Of a stretch of DNA of 64,000 nucleotides, positions 29,744 to 56,280 are shown piece by piece. Position numbers and translations under genes: made by a program. Numbering within the stretch: the first letter of the stretch is position 1; every line of letters starts with the position of its first letter. The stretch spans positions 144,146 through 208,145 of the IMG/VR virus record IMGVR_UViG_3300020186_000013, one strand, 5' to 3'. The notes under the pieces were generated by a model. That model saw only the letters and a program-made list of their open reading frames with translations, ran no database searches and was not told where the DNA came from.

Positions 29744-29752
29744 GATGATCTC

Positions 29753-33866: not shown

Positions 33867-33885
33867 GTCTCACTCCGTTGAGGGT

Positions 33886-34500
33886 TCAGTAATCCGCCGT
33901 CGGTCGAACGTACGACGGCGGCGGGTCGGCGGACTTTGGGTAGAACAGCTTATCCTGTTCGTGCATGACCCGGAAGACCGCTCGGATGGCGTCGACCGGG
34001 ACGCCGTCGTACACCATCACGATCGCCACCCGTCGGGACACCCGGCGGTACTCGGCGTACGACCGCGTGTCGTTGTACAGCACGCACGTCAGCGGCACGT
34101 GCTTCCAGTACCGGGTCTGCTCCAGGTAAGGCTTGAACGTCGCCGAGGCCCACCGGAACACGAAGGTCGACTTCTCGTCGTAGCACTTCTTCTCGACGTT
34201 GTACCACAGGGCGTCGATGTAGGGGAAGTCCGCGAACTCCGCGTCGACCAGGGCCTCGGCCGTCAGCCACCGCCTCCCGTTGAGCCGGTTGATGACGCAG
34301 ACCGCCCGCATCCGCACCTCGGCGTCCTCGCTAGTCGCCGCCGCGTGCTTGAGCTTGGCGACCACCGCCTCGCCCCGGTACATCAGGTCGGCCGTCGCCC
34401 GCTCGCGGACGCGGTACTCCTTGTCGCCCAGTTCGACAATCAGGCGGTCGACAGGGTCTACGTGGATGGCCAGCACTACGGCCAAGATGAAACCGATCAT
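33886..34500 (-). CDS. Signal-peptide protein with a planctomycete-type HEAT-like repeat
   Basis: MIGFILAVVLA; LIVELGDKEYRVRERATADL...SEDAEVRMRA. Confidence 0.65.
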   Translation of the reverse strand: MIGFILAVVLAIHVDPVDRLIVELGDKEYRVRERATADLMYRGEAVVAKLKHAAATSEDAEVRMRAVCVINRLNGRRWLTAEALVDAEFADFPYIDALWYNVEKKCYDEKSTFVFRWASATFKPYLEQTRYWKHVPLTCVLYNDTRSYAEYRRVSRRVAIVMVYDGVPVDAIRAVFRVMHEQDKLFYPKSADPPPSYVRPTADY

Positions 34501-34513
34501 TGGCGGTCCTCCG

Positions 34514-34981
34514 TTACACACCTTTCACTCCCCGAGGATGCAGTATGCGGTGCACCCGCTTGAGCTGTTTAACCATCTTCGGGATCTCGTGTTGCTCTAG
34601 GGTGACCCGTCCTTGCGTCACACTACTGGTGTAAGTCACAGCCCAATCAGCCCGTGGCATACTCTTGTTCGGGACCGTACCGTCGTACAGCGTTGCCAGC
34701 AGCTTGTCGATGAACGCGGCGATGGCTTGACCACTACCGTCACCCACAGTGAAGCGGACCCACGCAGAATCGCGTTCTCGGTCCCAACCAGGAAACCTCT
34801 CGCCTTTCTTCGGTCTGAGCATTTCCGCCATGGTCGGTGTTCGCGTGCCCTGACAGGAGTAGAGAGTGGCGACCTCTGGGAACAACAACAGAGCTTTAAC
34901 CAGAGGGGCAATCAACACGTCGACAGGGGATCGTACGGTGACCAGGATAGTCGGGTGTTCTTTCTTCACAACGACTCGCAT
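34514..34981 (-). CDS. Hypothetical phage protein (VD..IAPLV..L...V.TLYSCQG motif)
   Basis: Coding-like ORF. Confidence 0.6.
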   Translation of the reverse strand: MRVVVKKEHPTILVTVRSPVDVLIAPLVKALLLFPEVATLYSCQGTRTPTMAEMLRPKKGERFPGWDRERDSAWVRFTVGDGSGQAIAAFIDKLLATLYDGTVPNKSMPRADWAVTYTSSVTQGRVTLEQHEIPKMVKQLKRVHRILHPRGVKGV

Positions 34982-34990
34982 GGTGTGGTC

Positions 34991-35782
34991 TCAGGAGATT
35001 GGTCCGCCGTTGCGGACGATGATCTTCGGGTCTGCCTTCGTCTGCTCCAGGAGCTTCCTGTTCTGGGGGATGCGATTGATCTGCATCTGGCACTTCGGGT
35101 GGTCCATGTGGTAGACCGTCGGGTCGGTGAGCACCCGGTAGCGGACGCCCGCCCGGAAGCACCGCAGGCCGAACTCCTGGTCCTCGGCACCCGAGCCAAG
35201 CATCTCCTCCCACATGCCGCCGACGGACTTGGCGATTGCAGTGGGTAAACCCAGGTGGCACGTCCACAGGTAGCCCTGGATCTCCCACTTGTTATCCCGC
35301 ACCAGCTCGGCCATCCGCCGCTGGTGCTTGGCCTCGTGCCGCTGCTCGGGCCGAGCCGGGACCAACCGCTTGATGTCGGCCAGGTGCCGGTCGGTGAGCT
35401 GCTTGACAACTTCGAGGGCCACGAACCGACGGAAGCCAATGACGCCACCGTTGCCCCCGACGGTCGCGTGGCGGGCCACCAGGTCAGCCGGGCACAGGCA
35501 ATCGTCGTCGACGATAAGCAGGCGAGGTGCCTCGGAGTGCTTGATGCCGACATTGCGGGTCGCGGCGGCTCCGCACGGCTGGTGGCCGGGCTCGCGAGTC
35601 CAGTGGTGCTGGATGCGGAGCCGGTTCTTGAAGCGTTCGACGAGTTCAATCGTACTTGTGTCGCCGCCGTCGTTTACCACATGAACCTGGAAGTCCTTCT
35701 CCGACTGGAGGGCTAGGCTCTTGAGAGTCTTCTCCAGATAGAAGTTCTTCTTGTGCGTCGCGATGACCACGGAGACCTTCAT
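34991..35782 (-). CDS. Glycosyltransferase GT2 with GT7C-like C-terminus
   Basis: VSVVIATH...LALQSEKDFQVHVVNDGG...AAATRNVGIK...LLIVDDDCL; GAEDQEFGLR. Confidence 0.9.
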   Translation of the reverse strand: MKVSVVIATHKKNFYLEKTLKSLALQSEKDFQVHVVNDGGDTSTIELVERFKNRLRIQHHWTREPGHQPCGAAATRNVGIKHSEAPRLLIVDDDCLCPADLVARHATVGGNGGVIGFRRFVALEVVKQLTDRHLADIKRLVPARPEQRHEAKHQRRMAELVRDNKWEIQGYLWTCHLGLPTAIAKSVGGMWEEMLGSGAEDQEFGLRCFRAGVRYRVLTDPTVYHMDHPKCQMQINRIPQNRKLLEQTKADPKIIVRNGGPIS

Positions 35783-35957
35783 AGCCGACCTTCTTGTAGC
35801 CCAACGCCTTGGCGACGTTGAGGACGTCGATGAACGACGGGAACCGCACCTTCTTCTCGACCATGAAGCGTCGCACCGCCTGCATGAACTCGATCTCGTC
35901 GGGCGTGTACTCCGAGCCGACGGAGGTCTTGCTCAGCCCGTGGTTGGCGTCCGCCAT
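35646..35957 (-). CDS. Small planctomycete-like conserved protein (Y..DE.EFM.A......RFPS..DVL......GY); the 3' tail overlaps the next gene
   Basis: EYTPDEIEFMQAVRRFMVEKKVRFPSFIDVLNVAKALGYKKV; family recalled from planctomycete genomes, not searched. Confidence 0.55.
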   Translation of the reverse strand: MADANHGLSKTSVGSEYTPDEIEFMQAVRRFMVEKKVRFPSFIDVLNVAKALGYKKVGYEGLRGHRDAQEELLSGEDSQEPSPPVGEGLPGSCGKRRRRHKYD

Positions 35958-36517
35958 CACGCCCTCCAGCGAGTGACCCCGCCAGCCGTGTGCGTGAACG
36001 TCGAGGTGACCCCGCTGGCCAACTGCATCGACGACGGCGGCTGCCCAAAGACGACGCACCAGTAGATCCACCCCTTGGCCGACACGGCAACCCCAAATCC
36101 AACATTCCAGTAGGCGGGGTTGAGAATGTTGTTGCGGTGCGGCGGTGAACCGATCCAGTCCCGGAACACGGACGCGGGCGTCGTCTGCCCGGCGGCGATG
36201 TTCTCGCCGCACGAGCGGTACAGGTAGCCCGCCGTTGCAATGCGGTCGCTGACCACCGGCTCGCCCGGCAACTGGTGCGACATGCGGTCGGCCTTGGCCA
36301 TCGCGTCAGCGTGGACCTGGGCTGCCGTGCACAGCTTGCCGTTGAGCAACAGGATCGAGACGCGGCGTTCCGCCCGGTAGTCGTTGTGGAGAATGAGCAG
36401 CTTCGCCGCCGTCTCGTTGGCCGAGGGCGGTTGAGTCGGCCACGGGTTGGTGTTGGGAGGCAGTGGCTCGGGTCGCTTGCCGAAGAGAACCCAGGCAAAC
36501 CACTCACGCCACGTCAT
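35957..36517 (-). CDS. CAP (SCP/YkwD) domain protein
   Basis: HNDYRA...LCTAAQVHADAM...MSH...GENIAAGQ...WIGSPPHRNNILN...VGFG. Confidence 0.9.
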   Translation of the reverse strand: MTWREWFAWVLFGKRPEPLPPNTNPWPTQPPSANETAAKLLILHNDYRAERRVSILLLNGKLCTAAQVHADAMAKADRMSHQLPGEPVVSDRIATAGYLYRSCGENIAAGQTTPASVFRDWIGSPPHRNNILNPAYWNVGFGVAVSAKGWIYWCVVFGQPPSSMQLASGVTSTFTHTAGGVTRWRA

Positions 36518-36551
36518 GCTGTTGTCCACGTTCGCCTCCTTGCGAGTTAGA

Positions 36552-36902
36552 TCAGCAACTCTTGAACTCTCCGTCGACGAGGTGCCCGTGCCAGCCGCAG
36601 CAGCCTTTGCACAGGATCGACGGAGACAGCGTTAGCGTGGAAGGATCTTCCAGTGACCCCTTCACGGCGTCCCAGCTCGGCGGGGGCTCGGGCTTGGGGT
36701 GCCCGACAATAATCCCGCCCACGTCGCCGCACCCAGGACAGGCGAAGGTGAGGAAGCCCCCACGACCCTGGTCGGGGTGACCCTCGCACGACCCCGGCTC
36801 GGCGTACCGCTGAGCCATCAGATCCTTCTCGGGATCGTCGTCGGGTGACTTGACGACGATCGCCCTGACAGTTCGTTTCACGTCGACGAGCGGACGTTCC
36901 AT
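36552..36902 (-). CDS. DUF6527-like Cys/His protein
   Basis: FACPGCG...TLTLSPSILC..CCGWHGHLVDG. Confidence 0.6.
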   Translation of the reverse strand: MERPLVDVKRTVRAIVVKSPDDDPEKDLMAQRYAEPGSCEGHPDQGRGGFLTFACPGCGDVGGIIVGHPKPEPPPSWDAVKGSLEDPSTLTLSPSILCKGCCGWHGHLVDGEFKSC

Positions 36903-36940
36903 GTCAACTCCTTATGGGAACCAGAGTCACGGCCAGCTCC

Positions 36941-37720
36941 TTATAGGCCGGTCACCCACTTCAGCCAGAACTTGCACTGGCTAAAGTGTAGGACGATCGT
37001 CTCGGGCTCGCGGGCGTGCCACTTAGCCACCTCCGTGTCGAGCCAGGTGTGCATGTCGGTGGAGGCCGGGTCGTCCGTCCCGACGATCCGGTTCCACCCC
37101 GGACGGTCAAGGACGCGGTGGCCGTAGTCCCGCTTCCGCAGTGCCCAGATCAACGCCCCTTCGTCCTGCCACGTCACCAGCTGCCTCGCCCGGCCGACCG
37201 TGCCCTCGTGGCACATCCGCGTCCACTGCATGAGGAGGTCGGCGTCACGATCAGGGTCGAGACCAACCACGCCGTTGTTGGGCGGGTAGGGGATCTCGTG
37301 CAGGACGGGGAACAGCTCGTACAGTGAGGGGTCATTAGGTAGCGGGTAGGCCGTGTCGTACGTGTGACGCACCGCAAACGACCCGTTAGCCGCCAATTCA
37401 TCCAGGATCGCGTCTAAGGGCCTCAAAATGACGCAATCGGCATCCAGCCACAAACACTGGTCGAGGCCGCTGTAGGCCATCCAGACGGGCTTGTTCCAGA
37501 TCTGCCACAATTCATGCCCCACAGGAACCGCCAGGAGGCAGTCGTGGGGCTTGGGCTTCACGGTCACGCCACGGCGTCGCAGCCACTCTCCCTGGGTATC
37601 CGTCAGGCCGAGGTCGGTTACAACGACCGAGGTTGCAGGCGAGTTACCCGCAAGGGAGGTGACCAGGCACTGGAGCGGCCGGAAGTATTCCGAGTCGGCC
37701 GCTGTCACGACACCACGCAT
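36941..37720 (-). CDS. GT-A-fold glycosyltransferase (GT8 / nucleotide-diphospho-sugar transferase-like)
   Basis: VVVTDLGLT, WNKPVW, CLWLDADCVILRPLD, PNNGVVG, WQDEGALIW. Confidence 0.75.
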   Translation of the reverse strand: MRGVVTAADSEYFRPLQCLVTSLAGNSPATSVVVTDLGLTDTQGEWLRRRGVTVKPKPHDCLLAVPVGHELWQIWNKPVWMAYSGLDQCLWLDADCVILRPLDAILDELAANGSFAVRHTYDTAYPLPNDPSLYELFPVLHEIPYPPNNGVVGLDPDRDADLLMQWTRMCHEGTVGRARQLVTWQDEGALIWALRKRDYGHRVLDRPGWNRIVGTDDPASTDMHTWLDTEVAKWHAREPETIVLHFSQCKFWLKWVTGL

Positions 37721-37745
37721 GGGTACTCACTCCTAAAACCGGAAT

Positions 37746-38306
37746 CTAGATGTCGACGACCCAGCACGACCCCTTGACCGTCCGGTTGGGGAGCAGCTCG
37801 TCGACGGCCTTGATCACGCCGGGGTCCTCGGGCCGGTAGTCGTGGCCGCACAGCCAACCGCCGGACTTGACCTTGGGCATCCACGCCAGGATGTCGGCCT
37901 TGACGAAATCGTAGGTGTGGTCGCCGTCGATGAACACAACATCCTGGGAGCCGTCCGCGAATGTCGCTGCGGCTTGCACGCTAGAGAGCTGCATGGGGTG
38001 CACGTGCGAGCCGACGCCACCCTTAATCATGTTGTTGATAAACGCCGGGCACATGTCGCCGGGGATGTCGATCCCCCACGGGGCACTGTTGGTGGCCATG
38101 ATCCCGGTCCACGTGTCCACAGCGTAGATGGTGGGCTGCTTGCCGAGGTTGATGATCTCGACGGCCAAGAAGGCGGCACTGCGGCCGAGCCACGAGCCGA
38201 CCTCGACGACGCTGCCGTTGGCGGGCACCCGCCGGGCGATCTCCCGGTAGAGGTCGAACAGCGGGCCGTCCGAGAAACCCGGAATGGTCTCGAAGAAATG
38301 GTTCAT
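37746..38306 (-). CDS. Class I SAM methyltransferase (Methyltransf_24-like)
   Basis: VVEVGSWLGRS, VDTW, DVVFIDGDHTYDFVKADILAWMPKVKSGGWLCGHDY. Confidence 0.9.
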   Translation of the reverse strand: MNHFFETIPGFSDGPLFDLYREIARRVPANGSVVEVGSWLGRSAAFLAVEIINLGKQPTIYAVDTWTGIMATNSAPWGIDIPGDMCPAFINNMIKGGVGSHVHPMQLSSVQAAATFADGSQDVVFIDGDHTYDFVKADILAWMPKVKSGGWLCGHDYRPEDPGVIKAVDELLPNRTVKGSCWVVDI

Positions 38307-39424
38307 TAGTTTGAGATCCCCTCGAAAGTAACACACGCCTTCTCGCCGCCCAGCGGGATGTGGTGCTTCAACCAAATGCGGAGTTCGAGACCGATCGCAG
38401 AGTCCAGTTCCATGACCGACGTCGTCTGCCCGTACGAGAACCGGAACTGCATGCGTTGCTGCGTGATCCCCCGGCCGTTCGCCCCGACGATCACCGGGCA
38501 CAAGGGGAACGACCCCTGCGTGTAGTTGATCAGGTCGTCCGCATTCTTGAAATACTGCCGCGTCCCCGGCACTTCGAGCTTCGGCCCGGCAGGCTGCCCC
38601 AGTGCCTGCGGGTAGATGAACGCGGCCGTGATGATCGAGTCGTCGAACGACAGGTCCACGGAGATGTTCATCTCGAACGCCGTCAGCGTGAGCACCTTAC
38701 CGGCAGCCGGGGCGGCGATGAACGTGCTGCCGGAGTCCGCCGGGCTGTAGTGGTAGTCGCACGCGATCGCCAAGCCGTTCGCCGGGGCGGTGAAGAACGT
38801 GATGGTCCCGGCCGCGTAGTCGATCGTGTAGTCGCCGCCCGTGGCCATGCCGTACTCGCGTTCCGTCTTGACCACGCCGTCGACTCGGACCACGGGGACG
38901 TACGAGCCGTCGTCCGGGGTGAAGATGTAGTCCTCGTCCGAGATCTTGCCATGGCTCAGGTCGATGACGAACGGGTGATCCAGGTTGAACGTGACCGTGG
39001 AACCGTCTCCGGTTCCAACGGCCTCACCGCTGACCTCGACAGACTCCGTGAACCACGTCGTCTTGTCCGTGAAGTCCTGGGAGAAGACCATCGCCCGCGT
39101 GCCCACCGATACGGGCTTCTGCCAGACGAACTGCGGCGTCTCGAACGAGACCGACTGGATGTCGCCGGGCGTGGGCGTGTTGTCGTGGGCCGCGATCAAG
39201 CCGCCCTTGGGGTGCCCGGCTACGTCGTTATCGAGGATCGTCTTGTCGCCAGACGGGAGGGCATCCCTGAACAGCACAAGTACGTCGTCGCCACTCGTCC
39301 CGACGCTGTCGAGGGCGATGGAGATGGCCGATGCCCGGATCTCGGCGTCGAACTTCGACGGGTTGATCGCCCCGTCGGGGAAGTCATCGGCGATCGAGTA
39401 CGTGTACGTGGTTGGCGTGGGCAT
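38306..39424 (-). CDS. Probable virion/tail-associated structural protein
   Basis: GTGDGSTVTFNL and DYTIDYAAGTITFFTAPANGLAIACDY, a beta motif typical of tail/baseplate proteins. Confidence 0.55.
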   Translation of the reverse strand: MPTPTTYTYSIADDFPDGAINPSKFDAEIRASAISIALDSVGTSGDDVLVLFRDALPSGDKTILDNDVAGHPKGGLIAAHDNTPTPGDIQSVSFETPQFVWQKPVSVGTRAMVFSQDFTDKTTWFTESVEVSGEAVGTGDGSTVTFNLDHPFVIDLSHGKISDEDYIFTPDDGSYVPVVRVDGVVKTEREYGMATGGDYTIDYAAGTITFFTAPANGLAIACDYHYSPADSGSTFIAAPAAGKVLTLTAFEMNISVDLSFDDSIITAAFIYPQALGQPAGPKLEVPGTRQYFKNADDLINYTQGSFPLCPVIVGANGRGITQQRMQFRFSYGQTTSVMELDSAIGLELRIWLKHHIPLGGEKACVTFEGISN

Positions 39425-39991: not shown

Positions 39992-41269
39992 TTAGCCGAT
40001 CACAACAACGCGGTACTGGTTGGTCGTCGGTGCCACGGCGAACGTGACGTCGACGTTGTTGGCGTCCGTCACGACCCAGTCGGTGATCACGCCCGCACCG
40101 CCCGACACCGTGAACACCTGCACGATCACGTCCGTGGTGCCCAGTGCGTGGTTGACGGTGATCGTCGTGAGTGAGCCGTTGCCCACGCTGGCGGCGAACT
40201 TACCCGTGGCACCGAGGTTCGTGCGGGCACCGGCAGCCGTACCCGAGCCCGTGCCACCCCGAGTAACAGCGAGGTTGGCCTCACTCGACAGCGTGCCCGA
40301 GCCGTTGTTGATGACGACGTGGTCGGCCGTACCGTTGGCGATCTTGGTCCGAGCGATGGCTGCGGCCGTGGCGACCTCGGCGTTGGTCACGCCGAGGGCC
40401 TTGATGGAGAACGTGTTGCCCGTCAGCGTCAGCGAGACCTCGTCCGCGACGTAGGACGTGCCGGACGAGAACGTGATGAAGGTCAGCCCGTCCGTGCCCA
40501 CCACCGCCGAGCCGGTGTCGTTGGTGCAGACGAACGCCTTGTCGGCGTTGACCGTGCCCTTCTGGACCCAGAACGCGACCGACGCGGCGTCCGAGCCCGT
40601 GGGGAGGTCCGTCGCACGGGTCCAGGCACCCGCAGCGGCGACGTAGACGCCATCCTGCGACCCGGTCGACTGGCCGGTCGCCGCAACCCGCTCACCCGCC
40701 GAGACCGTGTAGCCGTCGATCGTGAGCAGGCCCGTGAGGGCGATGTTGGTCGTGGCGATGACGACGACGGGCTGGAGCCACTTGGTGCCGTTGATCAGGT
40801 TGTCGACATAGCTCTTGGTGACCGCGTCCGTGGCGTTGGTCACCGTGCCCGAGAGCGTCACACCCGACGAGCTGCCCGAGCCCGCGAAGGTGCCAATGCC
40901 CGCCGCGAAGTTGCCCGAACCGTCCCGGAGCACGATCGTCGAGGCCGTGTTCAAGGCGGTGGCGGCTGCGAGCTTGGTGAAGTCCGAGGACGACATGTAG
41001 CCGTTCTGGGAACCACTCGAAGCCTGCACCGTCAGGATCGGGGCGAGTGACGTGCCCGAGTTGGTGATCGGGGCCGTGACCGAGGTGCCCGTCGCCCAGA
41101 TGTCGTCGAGGCGGACCCAGCGGGAGCTGTTCCACAGGCGGAAGTAGCCGAGCACTGTGTCGTAGTAGATCTGGCCGACCACCGGCGAGCCGGGGGCCGA
41201 GGCCAGGTTCTGGACGCGAGCGTTTTGCAGCTCGTTCTGGTTCAGGTTGATGTTGTTGAGGAACAGCAT
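39992..41269 (-). CDS. Tail-fibre-like structural protein
   Basis: FLNNINLNQNELQNARVQNLASAPGSPVVGQIYYDT; DAVTKSYVD; ATTNIALTGLLTIDG; GVYVAAAGAWTRATD; ARTNLG. Confidence 0.7.
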   Translation of the reverse strand: MLFLNNINLNQNELQNARVQNLASAPGSPVVGQIYYDTVLGYFRLWNSSRWVRLDDIWATGTSVTAPITNSGTSLAPILTVQASSGSQNGYMSSSDFTKLAAATALNTASTIVLRDGSGNFAAGIGTFAGSGSSSGVTLSGTVTNATDAVTKSYVDNLINGTKWLQPVVVIATTNIALTGLLTIDGYTVSAGERVAATGQSTGSQDGVYVAAAGAWTRATDLPTGSDAASVAFWVQKGTVNADKAFVCTNDTGSAVVGTDGLTFITFSSGTSYVADEVSLTLTGNTFSIKALGVTNAEVATAAAIARTKIANGTADHVVINNGSGTLSSEANLAVTRGGTGSGTAAGARTNLGATGKFAASVGNGSLTTITVNHALGTTDVIVQVFTVSGGAGVITDWVVTDANNVDVTFAVAPTTNQYRVVVIG

Positions 41270-41656: not shown

Positions 41657-44600
41657 TTAGGAGTGGCCCTCGCCCGTCAGACCCTGAGCGGCTTGACGGG
41701 CTTTGTTAGTCTGGTGATGGAGTTCATCGCGTGCGGGTGCTTGACCGCCAGTGAGCTTGTTCCAAGCGTCGGAGATGGCTCCGGGGTTCTGCTGGATGCG
41801 GGGATAAGCCGCCAAGCCCGCACCACCCGCCATTATCAGCGGGTTACCAGTCAGCATCCCGAGCCCGCCGAGACCCATACCGCCCAACGCCATTCCCCGC
41901 TGCCCGCCCGTCATGTTCTCGGTGTCGTACCCCAGAGCTTTCAAGAACGGGTTACCGACGTTACCCACCCGCTGGCCGATCTGGTACCGGATCTCCTGGG
42001 TCGGGTCGAACTGGCCCTCCTCGTTGAGGAAGCCACGCTCGTGCATGTACTTGTCCGCGTCCCGTGCTATGTTCGCCTGCAACGTCGGGTAGTCCTGCTC
42101 GATGAAGGTCTTCTTCAGGTCGTTGATCTTGTTGTCGACGTCGCCGGCGACCTGGTCATGCAGAGAACCATAGGCCGTTCCGCCCAAAGCAGCAGCCCCC
42201 GTCCCGAGCGTCAACCCCTGCCCCGCCCGGAAGCCGAGCTTCCTGGCCCCGGACAAACCGGCGGCACCGCTCTGGTATGCACCTTTGCCCCACAGGAAGT
42301 GCCCGGCACGACTAAACGGGTCCATGACGCCCTGACCCATCCGCGTCATCGCGTTCGACGGAGCCTCCAGGGCGGTCGTGACACCCCGACTCAGCATGCT
42401 AGGTTCCACGGGCGTCGTCCCCGCCGCTCGTGCCGCTGCGTTCGTCCGAACCAAAGACGAGTTGCGTGCAGCAGCGACGTTGCCCCCCAGGCCAGTCATC
42501 AAACCGGCTCGACTCAGGCGACGGCTCCACTTCTCAGGGTCGTTCGGGTCACCGTTACCTGTCATGTCGCCGAGCTGGTCCATGCCGAACCCGATATTGG
42601 TCCCGGCAAACGACTGAGCCAACGGACGCCACAGCGTCTGACCCGTCGCCGAGTTGCGGAATCCTCGGTTGCCCATCAACGCACCGCCGGCAATGCCCAG
42701 CGGATTGATCCTCCAACTTCGCCAGCCGCCCTCGGGTTGGCCAGTGGCCGGGTCAATCCCCGGACTACCAAGGGTGAAACTACCCTCCCCGCCGCCCATC
42801 GCGTTGGCCGTCATGTTGCCTTGCAAGCCACCGAAGGTCATCTGCATGCCACTACCGGACATGTTCGCCCGCGTTCGACCGGCGGCAGTCGCCGCACGGG
42901 GGAGCGTGGCAGCCTCGGTGATGTTGAGACCCGAGTTGTCTTTACCGTGTGTTGCCGGACGCGGAGACACGATCTTCGGACCCATACCCGGCGTCGGAGC
43001 ACCCCGTGTGCCGGTCCGCATCAAGGGCTTGGTCGACGACGCACCAGGACGGACCAGTCCGCCCAGCCACTTCGCACCCGACACCAGGGTCTCCTTGCTG
43101 GGCCAGACGGCGTCCTTCTCGAACGCCTGCTTCTGCCCGAACATGCTGCCTAGGCCCTGGGCCATCTGCTGCCCGCCCATCATCGACCAACCCGACGGGG
43201 CGTACTGCGACGCCAGCTGCTGAGCCGACCCGGCAGCCTGCTCATTGGCCACCTCGGACGTTGCCTTCATCGACTTCGGACCGGTGATGGACATCGGCGG
43301 CGGGGCCAGCGACGCCGCCCCGGTATTCTTGTTGACGCTGACCTCACCCATCCCCTGCGGGTGTGTCGCCTGAGCCACCTGGGTCTTCTGACTCACCTGA
43401 TTCTTGCCCGTCGGCAGCGTACCGGGGGACGGAGCGGTCGGTGCGGTCTTGGGCTTCTCCTGCTTGCCGCCCACCATCTTGTCGAAGCTGTCGAGGAACG
43501 CGAGCTTCTTGAGGCCGGCAGCAAGCTCAGCGTGCACCTGAAGGCCGTAGTTGGTCCCGACCCGGTCCACGGCGGACTTGATCTGCGACAGACCGAGGCC
43601 CTTCTGACGACAGTGGTCAAAGAACGACTCGGCGAACGGCGTCATGTCCATGCCGCCTTTGTCGAACCCAGGTAGTCGCGGCCCGGTGTACGGGACCGGA
43701 GGAACAGGTTGTTGCTGCCCGAAGTTGGCAGGCAGACGCGACCCGGTGTACGGGACCGGAGGAACAGGTTGTTGCTGCCCGAAGTTGGCAGGCAGACGCG
43801 ACCCGGTATACGCCGGCACAACGTGCTGTGGCACCGGCTTAGCCTGGGGCATCGGCTGGGCCTGCGGTTGTGGCTGGGCCTGCGGTTGTGGCTGCTGGGC
43901 GGCGTTGGTGACCGGTGCCGCTAACTGCGGAGCAATGTTGCCGACGACGCCAGCCGTTTCAGATGGAGGGGCTTGCGTGGGATCGGCCAGAGCGTTCTGA
44001 ATTTGGCTAGAAAGTTGCCCGCCCAGGGTGAACTTGTTGACGTATCCGAGCCCACGGTATAAGGGGTACTTCTCTTCGTTCTGCTGAGCGTTGTACGCGG
44101 CATTGCCGATCGCGTACGGCAATTTGTTGCTCACATCATCAATGTTGGTCGGGTTCGACTTCGCCAGGGCCATCGCCCCACCAGCCCCCAAAAGTCCAGC
44201 ACCGGTAACACCCGCAGCCTGGGTCACTCCACCCATGGTCTTGTCGAAGCCCTTGAGACCATACCCGACAGCCTGTTGCCCTCGACCGAGAACGGCCCGC
44301 CCGCCACCCTGAGCCACGTTCGCGGCACCACGGGTAAGCATGCTGTTCTGGATCGGCTGAGTGAACGGCCGAGTCAGGGGCGTCGACAGGGTGTTCTTTA
44401 CGGTCTTGACGGCCTGCACAAGCGGGTGAGCCAAGCGGTTGGTGTCGAGAGCGTGGACGCCTCGGCTCAACATCGACACACCAGGGACGCCATCCATCAT
44501 GCCCGGCAACTGGTGGGTCTGGGCCAACTGCTCCTTGGTCGCCCCCGCCGCAACCCGAGACTGCATATCGGCCCGGTTCATGAGAGGCTTGACAGTCCGG

Positions 44601-46924
44601 GAGTCGAACAGCTTGGTGCCTTGGAGCTTGCCGCCCTGGCCGTAGCCGCCCATGGTCTTGGCAAACCCGGCTGCCCCGCGTCCCATTAAGCCGCCAACAC
44701 CACGAACAAGGGCACCAAAGTACGCTCGTTTCTCAAGGTCCTTCCGCTGACAGTGGTCGAAGAACGCTTTAGCGGCTGGAGTCATATCACTTCCCCCCTT
44801 GGCGAGTCCCGGCACTGTCGGCACGTGTGGTCGGATGAACCCAGGAACTTCCTGTCGGGCCGCGTCCTGTTGCTGTTGAAGCCGCTGCACCGCCCCTTGG
44901 CGAGCGTCGTCGATCGCCTTGTTGCCTGCTTGCTGCACGGAGTCGGCAGTCTCGTTGCCTACCTGTCGAGCGGAATTGGCCCACGCCTGCCCGCTCGTCG
45001 TGCGACCTAGCATTTGGTTGATGATCACCTGCTTGGCCACGGACTGCTTGGCCGCTTCTTGTTGCTGCCGAATACGCTGCATCGCTTCCTGCCGAGCAGT
45101 GTCGAGAGCCTCGCCACCCGCCTGCTGTGCGGACGAGGCCAGCGTCTGTACGCTCTTCTGAGCTATCCTCCCCTGTTCCTGGGCCATCAGCCGAGACGCC
45201 TCCTGGGCCGACATCCCTCCGCTCACCCTCTGAGCCCACGCCTTCGCAGCCGGGTGCGACATAGCCCCAGCAGCTTCCGGCGACTCGGCCACAGCCTTGA
45301 GGTTGAATTTCGGCTGAGCCGCAGCCAAACGAGGGTACAGGTTGGCTGCGGCGGTCATCTTGGCCGCGTCTTGCGGCGACTTCCAGGTCGACCAATTCAG
45401 CATGTCGGACACGGCGGGCACGTCGAGGGCACCCTGCACCCTGTTGCTTTTCATCGCAGCAGCCACCAGCGGCTCAGCCCTGGCGGCGTTGTTGTCCCCG
45501 ATCGCGTTGCCGAGGTGCGTGCGAACCGAGCGGTTCTGGAGCTCCTGCAACGCCTCGGGCGGGTAGTATTCGTGGCCGGTCCTCGTCGGCAGGCCGTGCT
45601 CATGGAACTGATTCTTCGAGAACGTCTGCGATCGGGCGATCGGGCTAACAGCCCGGAGCAGCCGCTGGCCCGTCGGGCTGTTGACGTTGGCCTCATAGTT
45701 CTGCTGGAGGGCTGGCAGCCGCTTGCGGACTTCCTCCTCCATGATCTGCTCGGTCGGGGCCGGCGTATAGTCGGCAAGGTTGCGGATCACCCCCTGCATG
45801 ATGTTGCCGCCCGCCGTGAAGTTGCCGATCCGCTTCATCACGTTGTTGACCGGGTTCTCGTTCGCCTGCACCATGCTGTTGTGGGCGGCGTTGCCGACGG
45901 TATACGGGAAGTTCCGCTTCCCCGCAGCCCGACCAACCTCGGCAATGTCGGACTTGTCCGTCAAGCTGTCCCATATCGCGGGGAGCGGATTGTCCCGTAA
46001 CTTGGCAATCTCGCCGTTCGGGTCCACCGTGTTGTACGGGTCAACGGCTCTCGTGAACCTCTGGAGGTTGTTAGCCGGGGCGTGCCACAAGGCATTCACC
46101 CCGCTGCCGAGGGCCACGCCCGCACCACCGAAGCCGACGATCTTGGTCGCAGCCCCGAGAGCCTTGTCGGCCCCCATGAGACCGTACCCGCCCGCCTGCT
46201 GTGCCCGACCCAGGATCGCCTTGCCTCCACCCTGGGCCACGTTCGTAGCACCACGGGCGAGCAGATTGTTCTGGATCGGGGTCGTGAGTGGGCGAGTTAA
46301 GGGCGTACCCAGCAGGTTCTTGGTCACGTTGGCCGCGTGCATGAACGGGTGCGTGAACCGGTTGCGGTCGAGGTAATTGAGAGCCTTGTTGGTCACCCCA
46401 ACACCAGGGATGCGGGACCAATTGCCTGGTAGCTCATGGGTCGCAGCGAGTTGCTCGCGAGTCTGCCCCGCCGCCAAGCGGGCGTTCATCCCCGGTCGAC
46501 GCAGGAACGGCTTCACCGTCGTCGAGTTGAACATGGTCTCGCCACGGAGGTTGCCCCCCTGACCAAAACCAGCGAGGTCCCGCACGTACGCCTTGCCGCC
46601 GTGGACCTGGGCGTCGCCCACGGCCTTCGCACCCGACCGGGCCACCTGGTTGACCTTGTCCGCCGCCTGGAAGGGTGCCTTCACCACGGCCTTGGTGCCC
46701 TGCCCGAACATCCGGGCCGCAGGACGGCCAATGCCGTTGAACAGGCCCACAGCACCACGGCCAAGGGCACCGAAGACGGCCTCCTTCTCCAGCCCCTCAT
46801 TCAGCTCGGCGTACACCTGCTCGCCGAAACGAAGGCCCACGCCGTCAACAGCCTCTTTGATCTGTTGCGGCGTGAGTCCCTTGTCACGGCAGCGGGCGAA
46901 GAATGCCTCGGCAAACGGCGTCAT
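41657..46924 (-). CDS. 1756-aa modular Gly/Ala/Gln-rich K-x-A polyprotein (putative virion internal/ejection protein)
   Basis: GAGG SD before ATG 46924; three MTP-leader modules; internal duplication of ~200 aa; many GxxxG helices. Confidence 0.75.
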   Translation of the reverse strand: MTPFAEAFFARCRDKGLTPQQIKEAVDGVGLRFGEQVYAELNEGLEKEAVFGALGRGAVGLFNGIGRPAARMFGQGTKAVVKAPFQAADKVNQVARSGAKAVGDAQVHGGKAYVRDLAGFGQGGNLRGETMFNSTTVKPFLRRPGMNARLAAGQTREQLAATHELPGNWSRIPGVGVTNKALNYLDRNRFTHPFMHAANVTKNLLGTPLTRPLTTPIQNNLLARGATNVAQGGGKAILGRAQQAGGYGLMGADKALGAATKIVGFGGAGVALGSGVNALWHAPANNLQRFTRAVDPYNTVDPNGEIAKLRDNPLPAIWDSLTDKSDIAEVGRAAGKRNFPYTVGNAAHNSMVQANENPVNNVMKRIGNFTAGGNIMQGVIRNLADYTPAPTEQIMEEEVRKRLPALQQNYEANVNSPTGQRLLRAVSPIARSQTFSKNQFHEHGLPTRTGHEYYPPEALQELQNRSVRTHLGNAIGDNNAARAEPLVAAAMKSNRVQGALDVPAVSDMLNWSTWKSPQDAAKMTAAANLYPRLAAAQPKFNLKAVAESPEAAGAMSHPAAKAWAQRVSGGMSAQEASRLMAQEQGRIAQKSVQTLASSAQQAGGEALDTARQEAMQRIRQQQEAAKQSVAKQVIINQMLGRTTSGQAWANSARQVGNETADSVQQAGNKAIDDARQGAVQRLQQQQDAARQEVPGFIRPHVPTVPGLAKGGSDMTPAAKAFFDHCQRKDLEKRAYFGALVRGVGGLMGRGAAGFAKTMGGYGQGGKLQGTKLFDSRTVKPLMNRADMQSRVAAGATKEQLAQTHQLPGMMDGVPGVSMLSRGVHALDTNRLAHPLVQAVKTVKNTLSTPLTRPFTQPIQNSMLTRGAANVAQGGGRAVLGRGQQAVGYGLKGFDKTMGGVTQAAGVTGAGLLGAGGAMALAKSNPTNIDDVSNKLPYAIGNAAYNAQQNEEKYPLYRGLGYVNKFTLGGQLSSQIQNALADPTQAPPSETAGVVGNIAPQLAAPVTNAAQQPQPQAQPQPQAQPMPQAKPVPQHVVPAYTGSRLPANFGQQQPVPPVPYTGSRLPANFGQQQPVPPVPYTGPRLPGFDKGGMDMTPFAESFFDHCRQKGLGLSQIKSAVDRVGTNYGLQVHAELAAGLKKLAFLDSFDKMVGGKQEKPKTAPTAPSPGTLPTGKNQVSQKTQVAQATHPQGMGEVSVNKNTGAASLAPPPMSITGPKSMKATSEVANEQAAGSAQQLASQYAPSGWSMMGGQQMAQGLGSMFGQKQAFEKDAVWPSKETLVSGAKWLGGLVRPGASSTKPLMRTGTRGAPTPGMGPKIVSPRPATHGKDNSGLNITEAATLPRAATAAGRTRANMSGSGMQMTFGGLQGNMTANAMGGGEGSFTLGSPGIDPATGQPEGGWRSWRINPLGIAGGALMGNRGFRNSATGQTLWRPLAQSFAGTNIGFGMDQLGDMTGNGDPNDPEKWSRRLSRAGLMTGLGGNVAAARNSSLVRTNAAARAAGTTPVEPSMLSRGVTTALEAPSNAMTRMGQGVMDPFSRAGHFLWGKGAYQSGAAGLSGARKLGFRAGQGLTLGTGAAALGGTAYGSLHDQVAGDVDNKINDLKKTFIEQDYPTLQANIARDADKYMHERGFLNEEGQFDPTQEIRYQIGQRVGNVGNPFLKALGYDTENMTGGQRGMALGGMGLGGLGMLTGNPLIMAGGAGLAAYPRIQQNPGAISDAWNKLTGGQAPARDELHHQTNKARQAAQGLTGEGHS
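43682..43812. repeat. In-frame 60-bp tandem repeat (two identical copies plus a partial) encoding YTGSRLPANFGQQQPVPPVP
   Basis: Lines 43681 and 43741 are identical after their first base. Confidence 0.95.
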
Positions 46925-46932
46925 GTCCGTCC

Positions 46933-49122
46933 TCACGCAAGTCGACTGAGTATCGCACCCTCGGCGATGAAGTTGGCGATGTCGAGGTCAACGGCGTCCT
47001 TCTCGGCCACGGGAGGGTCGTACGCGGCCTCGTCGGCACGGCGTCGCTTGGCGTCTATGGTCTTCTTGAACAGGCCCTCGTCGCCGCCGCAGGCGTACCA
47101 GTCGTCCATCCCCTCCTTGGAATGGAGGCCGTGCATCCCGCCCGCCATGATCCCGGCGGCACCCATGGTCGTGTCACGGTTGAGATCGTTGTTCACCACA
47201 GAGTCTGCGAGGTAGTCGTGCCTGTTGGCCCCCTTGGGAGACCGCCGCATGATCTCCTCCAGGTCCTCGTTGTTGGCCTTGCGGCTCAGGTACGCCAACG
47301 CACCCGTGATGCCCGCACCACCGAGACCGCCGATGGCTGCTCCCGTGCCGCCGCCAAGGTGAGCACCCAGGGCCGCACCGCCGAGACCGCCGAGGATGCC
47401 GGCACCAACGCCCTGCTTGGCCGGGGAGGCCATCATCTCGGGAATGGGCGTGGCATAGCTCTGGAAGATCTTGGGCAGCAGCCGGGACTTACCCTGGTCG
47501 ATCTGAGCCGTCTCGTCGGCGTCGAACTCCCGTGCGGACTTGTGCCGGCCCTTGAACGGGTTCGGCTCCTCCTTGGGCTTCTTCTTCAGGTAGTCGCCCA
47601 CTGAGGCCCACGCCTCCTGGCCCTGCATGTAGTGGTCGGGCTTGTGCTGGTACGACAGGTGCGTCCCCTCGCCCGTCGCCGTCACGGCCTTGCCCTTGTT
47701 GTCTTGGGCTGCGGACTTGAGCAGGAGCACGATCGCCCGGATGTCGAAGCTCCGCTTGTTAATCTCGTTGGCAGCGACGTCCTTGACGCCGGCCTGCTTG
47801 AGGATACCGGCCTCCTTGAGCAGCTGCCGGATCACGGTCACCCGGTCGGACGCCTGCTTCTTCTTGGCCAGGTGCTCTTCGACCTCACGGTCAGACTTCT
47901 CATCGGCCGACTCCATCTTGTCGCCAATGACAGGAGTCGCAGCGTGGTAACCCGCCACACCGCCGAGCCCGCCACCGGCAAGGCTGCCGAGGAACGTCGC
48001 AAGCGGCCCGCCACCCATGTGGTGCGACAGCAGGGCACCCGACGCTGAACCAAGACCAACACCGGCACCCGTGGAGATGCCACGGGCAGCACCGCGTGCG
48101 GCACCCATCGCCATCCGGCCCTTGGCGTGGCCGTAGCCTGCCCCGGCCACGCCACCGATACCGGCACCCTGCAATGCACCGCTGATGCCCGATCCCGCCG
48201 CGTAGCCGAGGGCCGCACCCAGGGGCATCTCGGCCTGCTTGTCTAGAATCTGGCTTTTAGATCCGCCGTCGGACGCCTCGGCCATCATGCCCATTCCCAT
48301 GCTGTCGTTCTTCAGGTCCTCCCGAGCGGCAGCCTGACCGACCGGACGACGGTTCTTCATGTTGAGCAGCCGCATCACGCCGTGGCGGATGTTCTGGCGG
48401 CGGTGCACCGGCGGCGGTGGCGGCGGGTCCTGCGGCGAGGTGCCAGGAACCGGCTGTCCGGGAGGCGGCTGGCCCGGTGCCACCGGCTGTCCGGGCATCG
48501 GGGGAGGCGGCATCGGTGGTTGGCCGGGGGGAGCACCCGGAGGGGGAGCCATGCCCGGAGGAGCACCCGGAGGGGGAGCCATGCCCGGAGGAGCACCCGG
48601 AGGGGGAGCCATGCCCGGAGGAGCACCAGGCGGCGGACCGGCCATCGGAGGACCAGCTGGAGGCGGTGCCAGGCCCGCAGCCTTTTTACTAAAAGCGGAT
48701 TTCTCGGCGAAAAGGGGTCGCCCGGTGTCGAGGGCCGTCCCAGGGTTCGTCGCCGTGGGTGGGTTAGGTCGGAGCGTGCGTACATTCCGGCTCTTGGCCT
48801 TGGAAGAACGCACCGGTCCCCCGTTGGGAACCGACTGAGCGGCCTTCATCTGACCCACAATCCGGGCCACCGCATCCCGAATGCCCTTTCCTGCCGCCCC
48901 GCTCGCCTGCTTCTGGGCCTGCTGGGCCGCAGCCTGAATGCCGCCGACCGTTGCGTTCGGTTGGGGGCGTGCGGCGATAGACTTGATGGGGTTGTTCTGG
49001 GCAGGCTTGCCCGCACCGGAGAGCATCTTGCTCAGGCCCATGCCCGGAAGACCGCCCATTCCCGACTGCTGCCCGCCGAGGACGATAGGACTCGGCTGAG
49101 CACCAAGAGCTTGCTTGTTCAC
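46933..49122 (-). CDS. 729-aa low-complexity K-x-A-motif protein with Pro-rich repeats and glycine zippers
   Basis: GGAGG SD before GTG; about a dozen K-x-A sites by eye (NKQA, QKQA, EKSA, KKAA, DKQA, KKQA, LKEA, LKQA, LKSA, HKSA, EKDA). Confidence 0.75.
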   Translation of the reverse strand: MNKQALGAQPSPIVLGGQQSGMGGLPGMGLSKMLSGAGKPAQNNPIKSIAARPQPNATVGGIQAAAQQAQKQASGAAGKGIRDAVARIVGQMKAAQSVPNGGPVRSSKAKSRNVRTLRPNPPTATNPGTALDTGRPLFAEKSAFSKKAAGLAPPPAGPPMAGPPPGAPPGMAPPPGAPPGMAPPPGAPPGMAPPPGAPPGQPPMPPPPMPGQPVAPGQPPPGQPVPGTSPQDPPPPPPVHRRQNIRHGVMRLLNMKNRRPVGQAAAREDLKNDSMGMGMMAEASDGGSKSQILDKQAEMPLGAALGYAAGSGISGALQGAGIGGVAGAGYGHAKGRMAMGAARGAARGISTGAGVGLGSASGALLSHHMGGGPLATFLGSLAGGGLGGVAGYHAATPVIGDKMESADEKSDREVEEHLAKKKQASDRVTVIRQLLKEAGILKQAGVKDVAANEINKRSFDIRAIVLLLKSAAQDNKGKAVTATGEGTHLSYQHKPDHYMQGQEAWASVGDYLKKKPKEEPNPFKGRHKSAREFDADETAQIDQGKSRLLPKIFQSYATPIPEMMASPAKQGVGAGILGGLGGAALGAHLGGGTGAAIGGLGGAGITGALAYLSRKANNEDLEEIMRRSPKGANRHDYLADSVVNNDLNRDTTMGAAGIMAGGMHGLHSKEGMDDWYACGGDEGLFKKTIDAKRRRADEAAYDPPVAEKDAVDLDIANFIAEGAILSRLA
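48531..48630. repeat. In-frame 30-bp tandem repeat x3 (GAPPGMAPPP)
   Basis: agggggagccatgcccggaggagcacccgg repeated. Confidence 0.95.
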
Positions 49123-55965: not shown

Positions 55966-56280
55966 TCAGCCCTTCTTCGGCTTCTTCGGGTGCATCGCCG
56001 GATACGCGAGCGGAACCACCTCGACCTCATCCATCAGTGCCGCGATGGACTTCTCCATGGACGAGAGGGGCGGCGGGTTGTCCTTGATCCGCTTCGACCG
56101 CTGGGCCAGCTTCGCCTGAAGGATGGCGATGTGGCCCTCCATCTCGGACTTCAGGAACGCGACGATCTGTTCGTCGGTCCAGTCGTTGCGGGCGACGTTA
56201 GGGGAGTGCAAGTTACTGCACTCTCCGTCCGCCCAGCTGATGTGCACCATCAGCGAGATCTGACAGAGGTCGGGTTCCAT
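55966..56280 (-). CDS. Hypothetical protein (104 aa)
   Basis: TAATG coupling to the tubulin gene. Confidence 0.65.
   Translation of the reverse strand: MEPDLCQISLMVHISWADGECSNLHSPNVARNDWTDEQIVAFLKSEMEGHIAILQAKLAQRSKRIKDNPPPLSSMEKSIAALMDEVEVVPLAYPAMHPKKPKKG

What the first reader, a model, noticed from the sequence alone, without database searches (positions are those of the whole stretch)
41657..46924. The 1756-aa gene is an in-frame concatemer of three gene-like units with a conserved linker and possible internal starts
Seen: three modules start MTPFAEAFFARC (ATG 46924), MTPAAKAFFDHC (ATG 44785) and MTPFAESFFDHC (ATG 43645). Both internal starts are preceded by the linker PG(L/F)(A/D)KGG(S/M)D. 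Modules 1 and 3 share the DNA GGACATGACGCCGTT, which includes bases upstream of the ATG, and module 2 has AAGGGGGGAAG just before its ATG. Modules 1 and 2 share a ~200-aa duplicated block (e.g. TPLTRPLTTPIQNNLLARGATNVAQGGG vs TPLTRPFTQPIQNSMLTRGAANVAQGGG). Inference: the gene arose by tandem duplication with stop loss and may yield nested products by internal initiation as well as by cleavage.
Basis: partly seen in the sequence, partly recalled or inferred. Interest (0 to 1): 0.7.

Follow-up and report, generated by a model that had tools for sequence, protein, structure and literature searches.

The report
Three-unit fused jumbo-phage gene
A 1755-residue gene of an uncultured 208-kb phage joins three units that exist as separate genes in relatives, each opened by the same small 50-residue domain. 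The architecture is real and variable, but its function and the way its units are separated remain unproven.

Summary
ORF 41657-46924(-) is intact in four independent metagenome runs. It has three in-frame MTP... unit starts, two near-identical junctions (PG-x-x-KGG-x-D-M), and a significant internal duplication.

It is not three copies of one gene. Units 1 and 2 are paralogues of an uncharacterised all-helical family (A). Unit 3 belongs to another uncharacterised family (B). All three share only a roughly 50-residue three-helix head domain.

Relatives show the units are separable:
- The nearest relative has two units (A-B) with the same junction.
- Another relative has head+B as a free gene starting at the same ATG, two codons after an in-frame TAG.
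- Family A occurs alone, or inside SNF2/NUDIX multidomain proteins.
- Distant B proteins carry the head domain internally, with Leu or Cys instead of Met and no ribosome-binding site.

Start-like features (strong SD, rare AT-ending codons) exist at 44785 but not at 43645.

The relative's junction peptide, VMKKGGSD, recurs exactly near the C-terminus of an unrelated RNA-polymerase-like protein of this phage. This suggests a peptide-level motif, possibly a processing site, and not only a fossil ribosome-binding site.

Function is unknown. The most likely reading is a virion-delivered modular protein. Tandem duplication is supported; stop loss and nested products remain plausible but untested.

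The parts
41657..46924 (-). Whole ORF, 1755 aa plus stop (P0001)
   Evidence: Intact in contigs of four runs, apart from assembly breaks in the repeat zone.
46775..46924 (-). Head (N) domain of unit 1, aa 1-50 (MTPFAEAFFARC...GLEKEA)
   Evidence: 61% identical to the unit 3 head domain. The same domain in the unit 3 model folds as three helices at pLDDT 96-97.
45590..46612 (-). Family A core of unit 1, about aa 105-445
   Evidence: Aligns with P0002, unit 2 and P0004-P0009, P0018, P0021. AF2 gives an all-helical model, pLDDT about 70-88 in the core.
44813..45589 (-). Unit 1 C-terminal extension, aa 446-704. It is Q/A-rich and contains a two-copy repeat of about 64 aa. It is absent from the two-unit relative.
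   Evidence: (DNA repeat 1792-1875 vs 1984-2067).
44786..44812 (-). Junction 1: PGLAKGGSD (aa 705-713), DNA ...AAGGGGGGAAGTGAT just before ATG 44785
   Evidence: SD pairing is -11.0 kcal/mol, the best of all in-frame ATGs of the gene and in the top 1% of 1344 internal ATGs of the genome. It lies in the rarest-codon window of the whole gene.
43646..44785 (-). Unit 2, aa 714-1093: truncated head domain, family A core with deletions, then a P/Q-rich tail
43669..43894 (-). Tandem repeats in the unit 2 tail: 60 nt x 2.4 (YTGSRLPANFGQQQPVPPVP) and 18 nt x about 3 (QAQPxP). Copy number varies between near-identical strains.
   Evidence: L011 has +54 nt here. Contigs of all four runs break here.
43646..43672 (-). 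Junction 2: PGFDKGGMD (aa 1085-1093), DNA AAAGGCGGCATGGAC just before ATG 43645
   Evidence: SD -7.1, GC3 1.0 and median local folding, so no start-like signal.
43475..43645 (-). Head (N) domain of unit 3, aa 1094-1150
   Evidence: AF2 pLDDT 96-97, three helices. Conserved in all B-family relatives.
41657..43474 (-). Family B body, aa 1151-1755: about 200 aa predicted disordered, then a Gly-rich helical region. The conserved C-terminal block has the consensus AD-x-Y-M-x-x-RG-x-L-N-x-x-GQFDPTQ ... glycine-zipper segment ... RNE-x-x-HQ (the window's own copy reads DKYMHERGFLNEEGQFDPTQE and RDELHHQ).
46933..49122 (-). Upstream ORF P0025 (up to 729 aa; start uncertain, called as 521 aa in L011). 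It is Pro-rich with Gly-zipper segments. Its family precedes or is fused to B-family genes in relatives.
   Evidence: motif sharing with P0014, P0015, P0017, P0020, P0022.

Best explanation
This is one real gene of an uncultured 208-kb jumbo phage, and it encodes a modular, polyprotein-like product with the layout [head-A]-junction-[head'-A']-junction-[head-B]. 'Head' is a 50-aa three-helix domain. A and B are two unrelated, uncharacterised, mostly helical, Gly-rich phage protein families.

Shown:
- The units occur as free genes or in other fusions in relatives.
- The number of units differs between close relatives (3 vs 2).
- Unit 2 is a tandem paralogue of unit 1. Its 5' end and upstream junction copy those of unit 3, as expected from unequal recombination between the repeated head-domain sequences.

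Inferred:
- The product is carried in the virion or delivered into the host as a cargo or ejection-type protein, analogous to 'polyvalent' phage proteins.
- The head domain serves as a common docking or incorporation module.
- The conserved junction (hydrophobic-x-K-G-G-x-D) is a peptide-level recognition site, most likely for proteolytic separation of the units.
- Internal initiation at ATG 44785 is a possible additional route to an A'-B product.
For: Architecture and duplication.

Integrity of the ORF.

Units separable in relatives:
- P0002 (1109 aa) is A-junction-B, with the KKGGSD-M junction.
- P0024 (436 aa, L004) is a free head+B gene starting MTPFAEAF. It has GGAGG, an in-frame TAG two codons upstream, and the same 15-mer.
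- A occurs alone in L005/L006 and L029.
- A sits inside 1444- and 1536-aa proteins with SNF2-helicase and NUDIX domains. SNF2-type ATPases are hub domains of polyvalent proteins, which are thought to be injected with the DNA (PMC5512222).

Age and partners of head+B:
- Head+B is an old unit with variable N-terminal partners, including a J-domain.
- A P0025-like gene precedes or is fused to B in L009, L031, P0014, P0015, P0017, P0020 and P0022.

Unit 2 origin: its first 45 nt match unit 3 better (33/45) than unit 1 (28/45), and FFDHC is shared only by units 2 and 3.

Peptide-level motif: VMKKGGSD recurs 8/8 near the C-terminus of an unrelated RNAP-like protein, with different codons and no ATG. 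None of 300 proteome shuffles gave such a match.

Start-like features at 44785.

Virion-type neighbours: a head-decoration-like 425-aa protein (PHROG E=2e-36; PDB 9nx3 E=8e-15) and a DUF2460 protein lie downstream.

Physical character: long disordered P/Q/G-rich stretches and glycine-zipper hydrophobic segments, as seen in ejection and tape-measure-type proteins. The weak BFVD hits are to proteins of these classes.
Against: - There is no functional annotation. Pfam, PHROGs, PDB sequence search and four fold libraries give nothing significant for A, B or the head domain.
- No capsid, portal, terminase or protease was identified near the gene or with the families tried. The flanks further out are sugar-modifying, methyltransferase and nucleotide-metabolism genes. 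Virion location is therefore only an inference.
- The window protein itself has no recognisable effector domain.
- No cognate protease was found.
- No RNA or protein data exist.
- The A-core tree cannot date the duplication. The relative's single A is equidistant from both window copies: 44 vs 39 exclusive shared sites.
Confidence: 0.5

Rival explanations
1. Nested products by internal translation initiation. Ribosomes would start at ATG 44785 and/or ATG 43645 as well as at 46924, giving A'-B and B proteins in fixed ratios, as with lambda C/Nu3.
For: - ATG 44785 has the strongest SD of the gene (-11.0 kcal/mol; top 1% of internal ATGs and stronger than 95% of called starts).
- GC3 is 0.2 in codons 2-6. 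True starts average 0.64 and the bulk of coding sequence 0.82.
- It sits in the rarest-codon window of the whole gene, and local mRNA structure is weak.
- The relative's single junction has AAGGGAGG seven nt before its ATG, followed by A-ending codons.
- All six head domains in the close clade begin with Met, and three of those are true starts.
Against: - ATG 43645 has no start-like signal.
- K-G-G coding alone gives a median SD of -7.8 kcal/mol, and the observed values are unexceptional under synonymous resampling (P=0.27-0.29).
- Distant relatives have Leu, Cys or other non-Met residues at this position. The L007 junction is AAT TTA|ACG with no SD.
- The same peptide motif occurs where no start is possible.
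- No ribosome or protein data exist.
Confidence: 0.3
2. The junction is only a fossil of former gene boundaries (ribosome-binding site plus ATG). The protein would act as one uncleaved chain of about 190 kDa, and the module number would simply tune its length or valency.
For: - The free-standing head+B gene in L004 has GGAGG-TAG-GAC-ATG where the fused genes have GGAGG-CAGT-GAC-ATG.
- Distant relatives are fused without any Met.
- No protease was found.
Against: - The K-G-G-x-D peptide is kept across junctions whose synonymous sites differ.
- A K-K-(A/G) motif precedes the head domain even in distant proteins.
- VMKKGGSD recurs in an unrelated protein.
Confidence: 0.25
3. Tape measure protein. 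On this reading the gene sets tail length, and duplication or loss of units (1755 vs 1109 vs 436 aa) changes the tail length of related phages.
For: - The protein is long, largely helical and Gly-rich, with hydrophobic glycine-zipper segments.
- It has internal duplications, and length varies among relatives.
- A DUF2460 (distal-tail-like) gene lies four genes downstream.
- Several weak, non-significant BFVD hits are tape measure proteins.
Against: - No TMP family hit in Pfam or PHROGs.
- Stretches of 200 aa or more are predicted disordered and are Pro-rich, which is incompatible with a helical ruler.
- Family A occurs fused to folded SNF2 helicase and NUDIX domains, and alone in non-tail contexts.
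- No chaperone frameshift pair, tube or sheath was recognised upstream.
- The genes after DUF2460 are methyl- and glycosyltransferases.
Confidence: 0.12
4. Artefact. On this reading the units are really separate genes and the long frame comes from assembly or sequencing error.
For: One near-identical JGI contig (L011) has a 1-nt deletion at 43481 that splits the gene into 1194 + 606 aa.
Against: - Four independent runs give gap-free contigs over that site. One of them (X3) carries the three SNPs of the L011 strain.
- The deletion lies 55 codons inside unit 3, not at a junction.
- The relative P0002 is also fused.
Confidence: 0.03

Closest known systems
Polyvalent proteins of phages and conjugative elements (Iyer, Burroughs, Anantharaman, Aravind 2017, PMC5512222)
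   Same: Very large multi-module phage proteins whose modules also occur alone or in other combinations. Family A is found inside SNF2-helicase + NUDIX giants and next to a 2H-phosphoesterase gene in relatives. Delivery with the DNA and separation of the modules are proposed for this class.
   Different: The window protein has no recognisable enzymatic or anti-defence domain, no MuF or portal fusion and no peptidase domain. Its units are repeats of unknown structural-looking families, each headed by a private 50-aa domain.
In-frame nested genes with internal initiation (lambda C/Nu3; from own knowledge)
   Same: An in-frame internal ATG with its own SD inside a phage morphogenesis-region gene could give a C-terminal co-product.
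   Different: Only one of the two internal ATGs looks like a start. The start is not conserved in distant relatives, and no product data exist.
Viral polyproteins cut at Gly-Gly-X (ASFV pp220/pp62 by pS273R, adenovirus protease sites; from own knowledge)
   Same: Units are joined by a short conserved motif with a G-G pair (K-G-G-S/M-D). The same motif sits near the end of a second large protein of the same virus.
   Different: No clan-CE or other protease was found (only Pfam C48, C39, S77 and S78 were tried). Cleavage is not shown, and the host is bacterial.
Tape measure proteins with internal duplications (tail-length rulers; from own knowledge)
   Same: Long helical Gly-rich protein, in-frame duplications, and length differences among relatives.
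   Different: No family match, long disordered Pro-rich regions, and atypical domain partners and gene context.
T4 internal proteins with a shared N-terminal capsid-targeting sequence (from own knowledge)
   Same: Several different cargo units carry the same short N-terminal element.
   Different: Here the element is a folded 50-aa domain. It is not a 10-aa peptide ending in L-x-E. In T4 the units are separate genes.

Membership tests
Polyvalent proteins (PMC5512222) | Two or more distinct effector or enzymatic domains in one polypeptide | tested here: not met
   Pfam and PHROGs find no domain in P0001. The feature is met only in the relatives P0005 and P0006, which carry SNF2, Helicase_C and NUDIX.
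Polyvalent proteins (PMC5512222) | Encoded by a phage or conjugative element, in or near virion genes or fused to MuF/portal | tested here: inconclusive
   Phage origin is met. A decoration-like protein and a DUF2460 protein lie downstream. No MuF, portal or capsid gene was recognised.
Polyvalent proteins (PMC5512222) | Peptidase domain for processing (frequent, not universal) | tested here: not met
   There is no peptidase domain in P0001 or its homologues. The genome has no S78, S77, C48 or C39 family match.
Nested in-frame genes (lambda C/Nu3 type) | Internal in-frame start codon with an SD at proper spacing | tested here: met
   Met for ATG 44785 (-11.0 kcal/mol, low GC3, weak structure). 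ATG 43645 is only middling (-7.1, GC3 1.0).
Nested in-frame genes (lambda C/Nu3 type) | Internal start conserved in homologues | tested here: not met
   The start is kept in the close relative P0002. It is absent in distant relatives, which have Leu, Cys or other residues and no SD in L007.
Nested in-frame genes (lambda C/Nu3 type) | A shorter co-product is actually made | not testable with these tools
   No RNA run was listed and no proteomics is available.
Tape measure proteins | Match to a TMP sequence family | tested here: not met
   No Pfam or PHROG TMP hit for P0001 or any homologue. There are only non-significant fold hits.
Tape measure proteins | Gene lies between the tail chaperone pair and the distal-tail or hub genes | tested here: inconclusive
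   DUF2460 lies four genes downstream. The upstream genes are unrecognisable.
Tape measure proteins | Almost entirely an extended alpha-helix | tested here: not met
   About 200 aa of unit 3 and the P/Q-rich tail of unit 2 are predicted disordered.
Gly-Gly-X processed viral polyproteins | Conserved G-G-X motif at unit borders | tested here: met
   K-G-G-S-D, K-G-G-M-D and K-K-G-G-S-D are found at the three junctions examined. The same 8-mer occurs in an RNAP-like protein.
Gly-Gly-X processed viral polyproteins | Cognate cysteine protease encoded by the virus | tested here: not met
   Pfam C48 and C39 are absent from the genome. Other protease families were not searched.
Gly-Gly-X processed viral polyproteins | Cleavage demonstrated | not testable with these tools
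   No protein-level data.

The most novel reading that the evidence does not exclude
The 50-aa head domain and the hydrophobic-x-K-G-G-x-D junction together form a previously undescribed phage system. In this reading the junction is a processing or recognition site shared by several large virion-delivered proteins, including an RNA-polymerase-like subunit. The head domain would address each released unit to the particle or to a common partner. Phages of this clade would then add, lose or swap cargo units by recombination between head-domain repeats.
Probability: 0.2. Interest if true: 0.65.

Novelty: new variant of a known kind. Interest (0 to 1): 0.45.

Why it matters
Modular giant phage proteins are known, and so is the growth of such genes by fusion and duplication. 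This case adds three points.
- It defines two unannotated protein families and a well-folding 50-aa head domain. Only about 20 representatives exist among 1.8 billion proteins.
- It captures fused, split and duplicated states of the same units in related phages.
- It yields a short junction motif that recurs in an unrelated protein of the same phage, which gives a concrete, testable handle on processing or targeting in a clade of uncultured jumbo phages from microbial mats.

The phage also encodes multisubunit RNA polymerase and a tubulin-like protein. If the motif proves to be a cleavage or packaging signal, it could be used to predict virion cargo in such phages.

Tried and rejected
Searches that found no relative or annotation:
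- Phage GenBank collection by DNA and by protein: no match.
- IMG/VR scans with unit 3, with the A-family alignment and with a degenerate GQFDPT pattern: no relatives, only chance hits.
- A second word-index search with the B profile added only P0026.
- Pfam and PHROGs on the protein, its neighbours and all homologues gave only accessory domains.
- PDB sequence search on neighbours found only the decoration-like hit.
- ESM Atlas gave no lead.
- Fold searches of both AF2 models (PDB Foldseek, VIA wide, BFVD, AFDB clusters, Atlas) gave nothing significant. The helical-hairpin and Tim17-like hits have Z below 7.

Hypotheses considered and dropped:
- The head domain ends in a protease site of the phiKZ (S/A/G-x-E) or T4 (L-x-E) type. 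Rejected, because the Glu is not conserved; it is E, K, Q, N or I in different relatives.
- The relative's single A is a recombinant of units 1 and 2. There is no block pattern; exclusive shared sites are interspersed 44 vs 39.
- The L011 frameshift is a natural split of the gene. It is not supported by the independent contig of the same strain.

Other negative results:
- No internal sigma-70-like promoter on the coding strand.
- Protease families S78, S77, C48 and C39, and HK97 capsid Pfam, are absent.
- No RNA run was listed.
Full report
**Setting.** The window is the last 64 kb of a 208,145-bp IMG/VR virus record, about 63% G+C, with CheckV completeness 93%. The genome is very poorly annotated by Pfam and PHROGs. 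Recognisable genes include:
- multisubunit RNA-polymerase beta-like proteins, whose nearest relative is Salmonella phage Arash at 32% identity;
- a tubulin/FtsZ-like protein;
- a ribonucleotide reductase;
- a block of glycosyl- and methyltransferases.

The phage occurs at depths of about 15-130 in several microbial-mat metagenomes.

**Check of the observation.** The ORF 41657-46924(-) gives 1755 residues. Its ATG lies 8 nt after the TGA of the upstream ORF and is preceded by GAGGA.
- In-frame MTP starts are at residues 714 (ATG 44785) and 1094 (ATG 43645). They are preceded by VPGLAKGGSD and LPGFDKGGMD.
- The 15-mer GGACATGACGCCGTT is found only at the unit 1 and unit 3 starts, against 0.02 expected.
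- Unit 1 vs unit 2: BLASTP E=4.6e-57. Unit 1 vs unit 3: only the first 51 residues, 61% identity, E=4e-15. Unit 2 vs unit 3: only the first 17 residues.
- The head domain occurs nowhere else in the genome, and neither do families A and B.
- The frame is not an artefact. Contigs from four runs cover the gene without gaps, except for assembly breaks inside the tandem repeats at 43711-43835.
- One near-identical JGI contig (L011) has a 1-nt deletion at 43481 that splits the gene into 1194 + 606 aa. An independent contig of the strain with the same three SNPs lacks the deletion.

**Anatomy.**
- Unit 1 is a head domain (aa 1-50), a family A core (about 105-445), and a Q/A-rich extension of about 260 aa with a two-copy repeat.
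- Unit 2 is a truncated head domain (28 residues missing), an A core with deletions, and a P/Q-rich tail. The tail carries 18-nt and 60-nt tandem repeats, and their copy number differs in L011 by +54 nt.
- Unit 3 is a full head domain plus family B.

AF2 models the unit 3 head domain as three helices at pLDDT 96-97. It is followed by about 200 disordered residues, then helical Gly-rich regions and a confident C-terminal block at pLDDT 89-92. The A core is all-helical at pLDDT about 70-88. Each unit has a Gly/Ala-rich hydrophobic glycine-zipper-like segment. No sequence family or fold library gives a significant match.

**Relatives.** The 5.8-billion-protein index holds one close relative, P0002 (1109 aa), on a 9.5-kb contig that is about 75% identical to the window and syntenic with it. 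It has only two units: A (445 aa), the junction VMKKGGSD-M, then B. Its junction DNA is AAAAAGGGAGGCAGTGAC-ATG.

An exhaustive HMMER search of 1.84 billion representatives found 23 proteins.
- Family A occurs alone (P0004, P0008, P0009, P0018, P0021). Its contexts are unrelated to B.
- A also occurs behind another domain (P0007), and inside the 1444-aa and 1536-aa proteins P0005 and P0006 together with SNF2-type helicase domains, plus a NUDIX domain in P0005.
- Family B always follows the head domain.
- In P0024 (L004) head+B is a free gene that starts MTPFAEAF. It has GGAGG upstream, an in-frame TAG two codons before the ATG, and the same 15-mer.
- In P0011, P0014, P0015, P0016, P0017, P0020, P0022 and P0026 the head domain is internal. 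It is preceded by a K-K-(A/G/Q) motif and by Leu, Cys or another non-Met residue, with variable N-terminal partners including a J-domain.
- Part of those N-terminal partners is homologous to the window's upstream ORF P0025. Free P0025-like genes with the same C-terminal ending precede B genes in L009 and L031.

The units are therefore gene-like and are shuffled between fused and split states across this clade.

**Origin of the three-unit state.** The first 45 nt of unit 2 match unit 3 (33/45) better than unit 1 (28/45). FFDHC is shared only by units 2 and 3, while the rest of unit 2 is A-like. This is the pattern expected from unequal recombination between the head-domain repeat of unit 3 and that of unit 1. 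Such an event would also duplicate the junction. Gene conversion is an alternative. The timing is unresolved. The relative's single A shares 44 exclusive sites with unit 1 and 39 with unit 2, interspersed, and it groups weakly with unit 2. That fits either an old duplication with later loss, or accelerated divergence of both copies after a recent duplication.

**Internal starts.**
- True starts in this genome have SD pairing around -7 kcal/mol and reduced GC3 in codons 2-6 (0.64 vs 0.82).
- ATG 44785 has -11.0 kcal/mol, the best of the gene and in the top 1% of 1344 internal ATGs. Its GC3 is 0.2, it lies in the rarest-codon window of the whole gene, and local structure is weak.
- ATG 43645 has -7.1 kcal/mol, GC3 1.0 and average structure.
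- The relative's junction resembles 44785 (-11.3 kcal/mol, A-ending codons).
- Coding K-G-G by itself gives a median of -7.8 kcal/mol, and the observed energies are unexceptional under synonymous resampling (P about 0.3). The SD argument therefore rests mainly on the rare-codon cluster at 44785.
- The L007 junction has no start features.

**A peptide-level junction motif.** VMKKGGSD is the relative's junction. It recurs exactly 11 residues before the C-terminus of an unrelated 1285-aa RNAP-beta-like protein of the window's own genome. The codons differ there, no ATG follows, and none of 300 proteome shuffles gave such a match. Together with the K-K-(A/G) motif before the head domain in distant proteins, this suggests a short linear motif read at the protein level. 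It would be a cleavage or recognition site, and not merely a fossil ribosome-binding site. No protease of the four families tried was found.

**Function.** Nothing is shown directly. The following point to a virion-carried, possibly injected, modular protein, by analogy with polyvalent proteins (PMC5512222):
- long disordered P/Q/G-rich stretches and glycine-zipper segments;
- a head-decoration-like protein and a DUF2460 protein just downstream;
- association of family A with SNF2, NUDIX and 2H-type genes in relatives.

A tape-measure role is a weaker alternative. The flanks beyond the immediate neighbours are not structural genes, so the virion assignment is an inference.

**Verdict.** There is a real tandem duplication and there are gene-like units. 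However, two different families are joined by a shared head domain. A plausible internal start exists at 44785 only. The junction behaves more like a peptide motif than a fossil ribosome-binding site. In kind this is a new variant of known modular or fused phage proteins, built from uncharacterised families. Interest is moderate.

Noticed in passing
G000:C1:134565-138422 (minus), outside the window; read as L019:14565-18422: A 1285-aa RNA-polymerase-beta-like protein ends ...FRTPAVMKKGGSDWLSLLR. Its VMKKGGSD is identical to the inter-unit junction of the relative P0002, although the codons differ.
   Followed up: partly
window 56280-58061 (-): A 593-aa protein with a Tubulin/FtsZ GTPase-domain match (Pfam E=1e-10, residues 323-406), in a jumbo phage that also encodes multisubunit RNAP-like genes.
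   Followed up: no
window 2-1627 (-), continuing to G000:C1:142656-145772; also G000:C1:140507-142255 and 134565-138422: Three large RNAP beta/beta'-like genes. The nearest known relative is Salmonella phage Arash at 32% identity, followed by Vibrio phages D69, D181 and D148.
   Followed up: partly
window 46933-49122 (-), repeats at 48523-48677: The upstream ORF P0025 has a 30-nt tandem repeat (about 5 copies) coding PPGAPPGMAP, plus glycine-zipper segments. Its family is fused to B-family proteins in distant relatives and ends with a conserved F-I/L-A-E-G-x-x-L-S-R-L tail.
   Followed up: partly
L011:9997 (= window 43481): A near-identical JGI contig has a 1-nt deletion (GACAAG to GAAAG) that splits the gene into 1194 + 606 aa. 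It is not seen in the Logan contig of the same SNP type, so it is an assembly error or a rare variant.
   Followed up: yes
window 43711-43835: Contigs of all four runs break inside the 18-nt and 60-nt repeats, and L011 has three extra 18-nt units. This points to repeat copy-number heterogeneity within the population.
   Followed up: partly
window 43649 / 45500 (run X3): A low-depth 649-nt contig joins these two places with 353 other letters between them. It may be a co-occurring relative with a shorter, two-unit-like architecture. The flanking matches are only about 25 nt, so this is weak.
   Followed up: no
window 27681-38309 (-): A block of sugar-modifying and methylating genes lies downstream of the cluster: UDP-glucose dehydrogenase-like, glycosyltransferases, radical SAM, several methyltransferases, a CAP-domain protein and DUF6527/BubE. 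B-family genes in L007 and L012 also sit next to methyl-, sulfo- and glycosyltransferase clusters.
   Followed up: no
window 39992-41269 (-): A 425-aa protein matches PHROG 'head decoration' (E=2e-36) and, in two segments, the capsid decoration protein of PDB 9nx3. The same PHROG scan also hits 'tail fiber' and 'virion structural' families.
   Followed up: partly
P0005, P0006, P0007 (relatives): A further conserved block (roughly SYSD...Y...A-P-x-E/D-W/F-x-hydrophobic-D-S...GLTH...H-hydrophobic-P) accompanies family A in these proteins. It has no family assignment.
   Followed up: no
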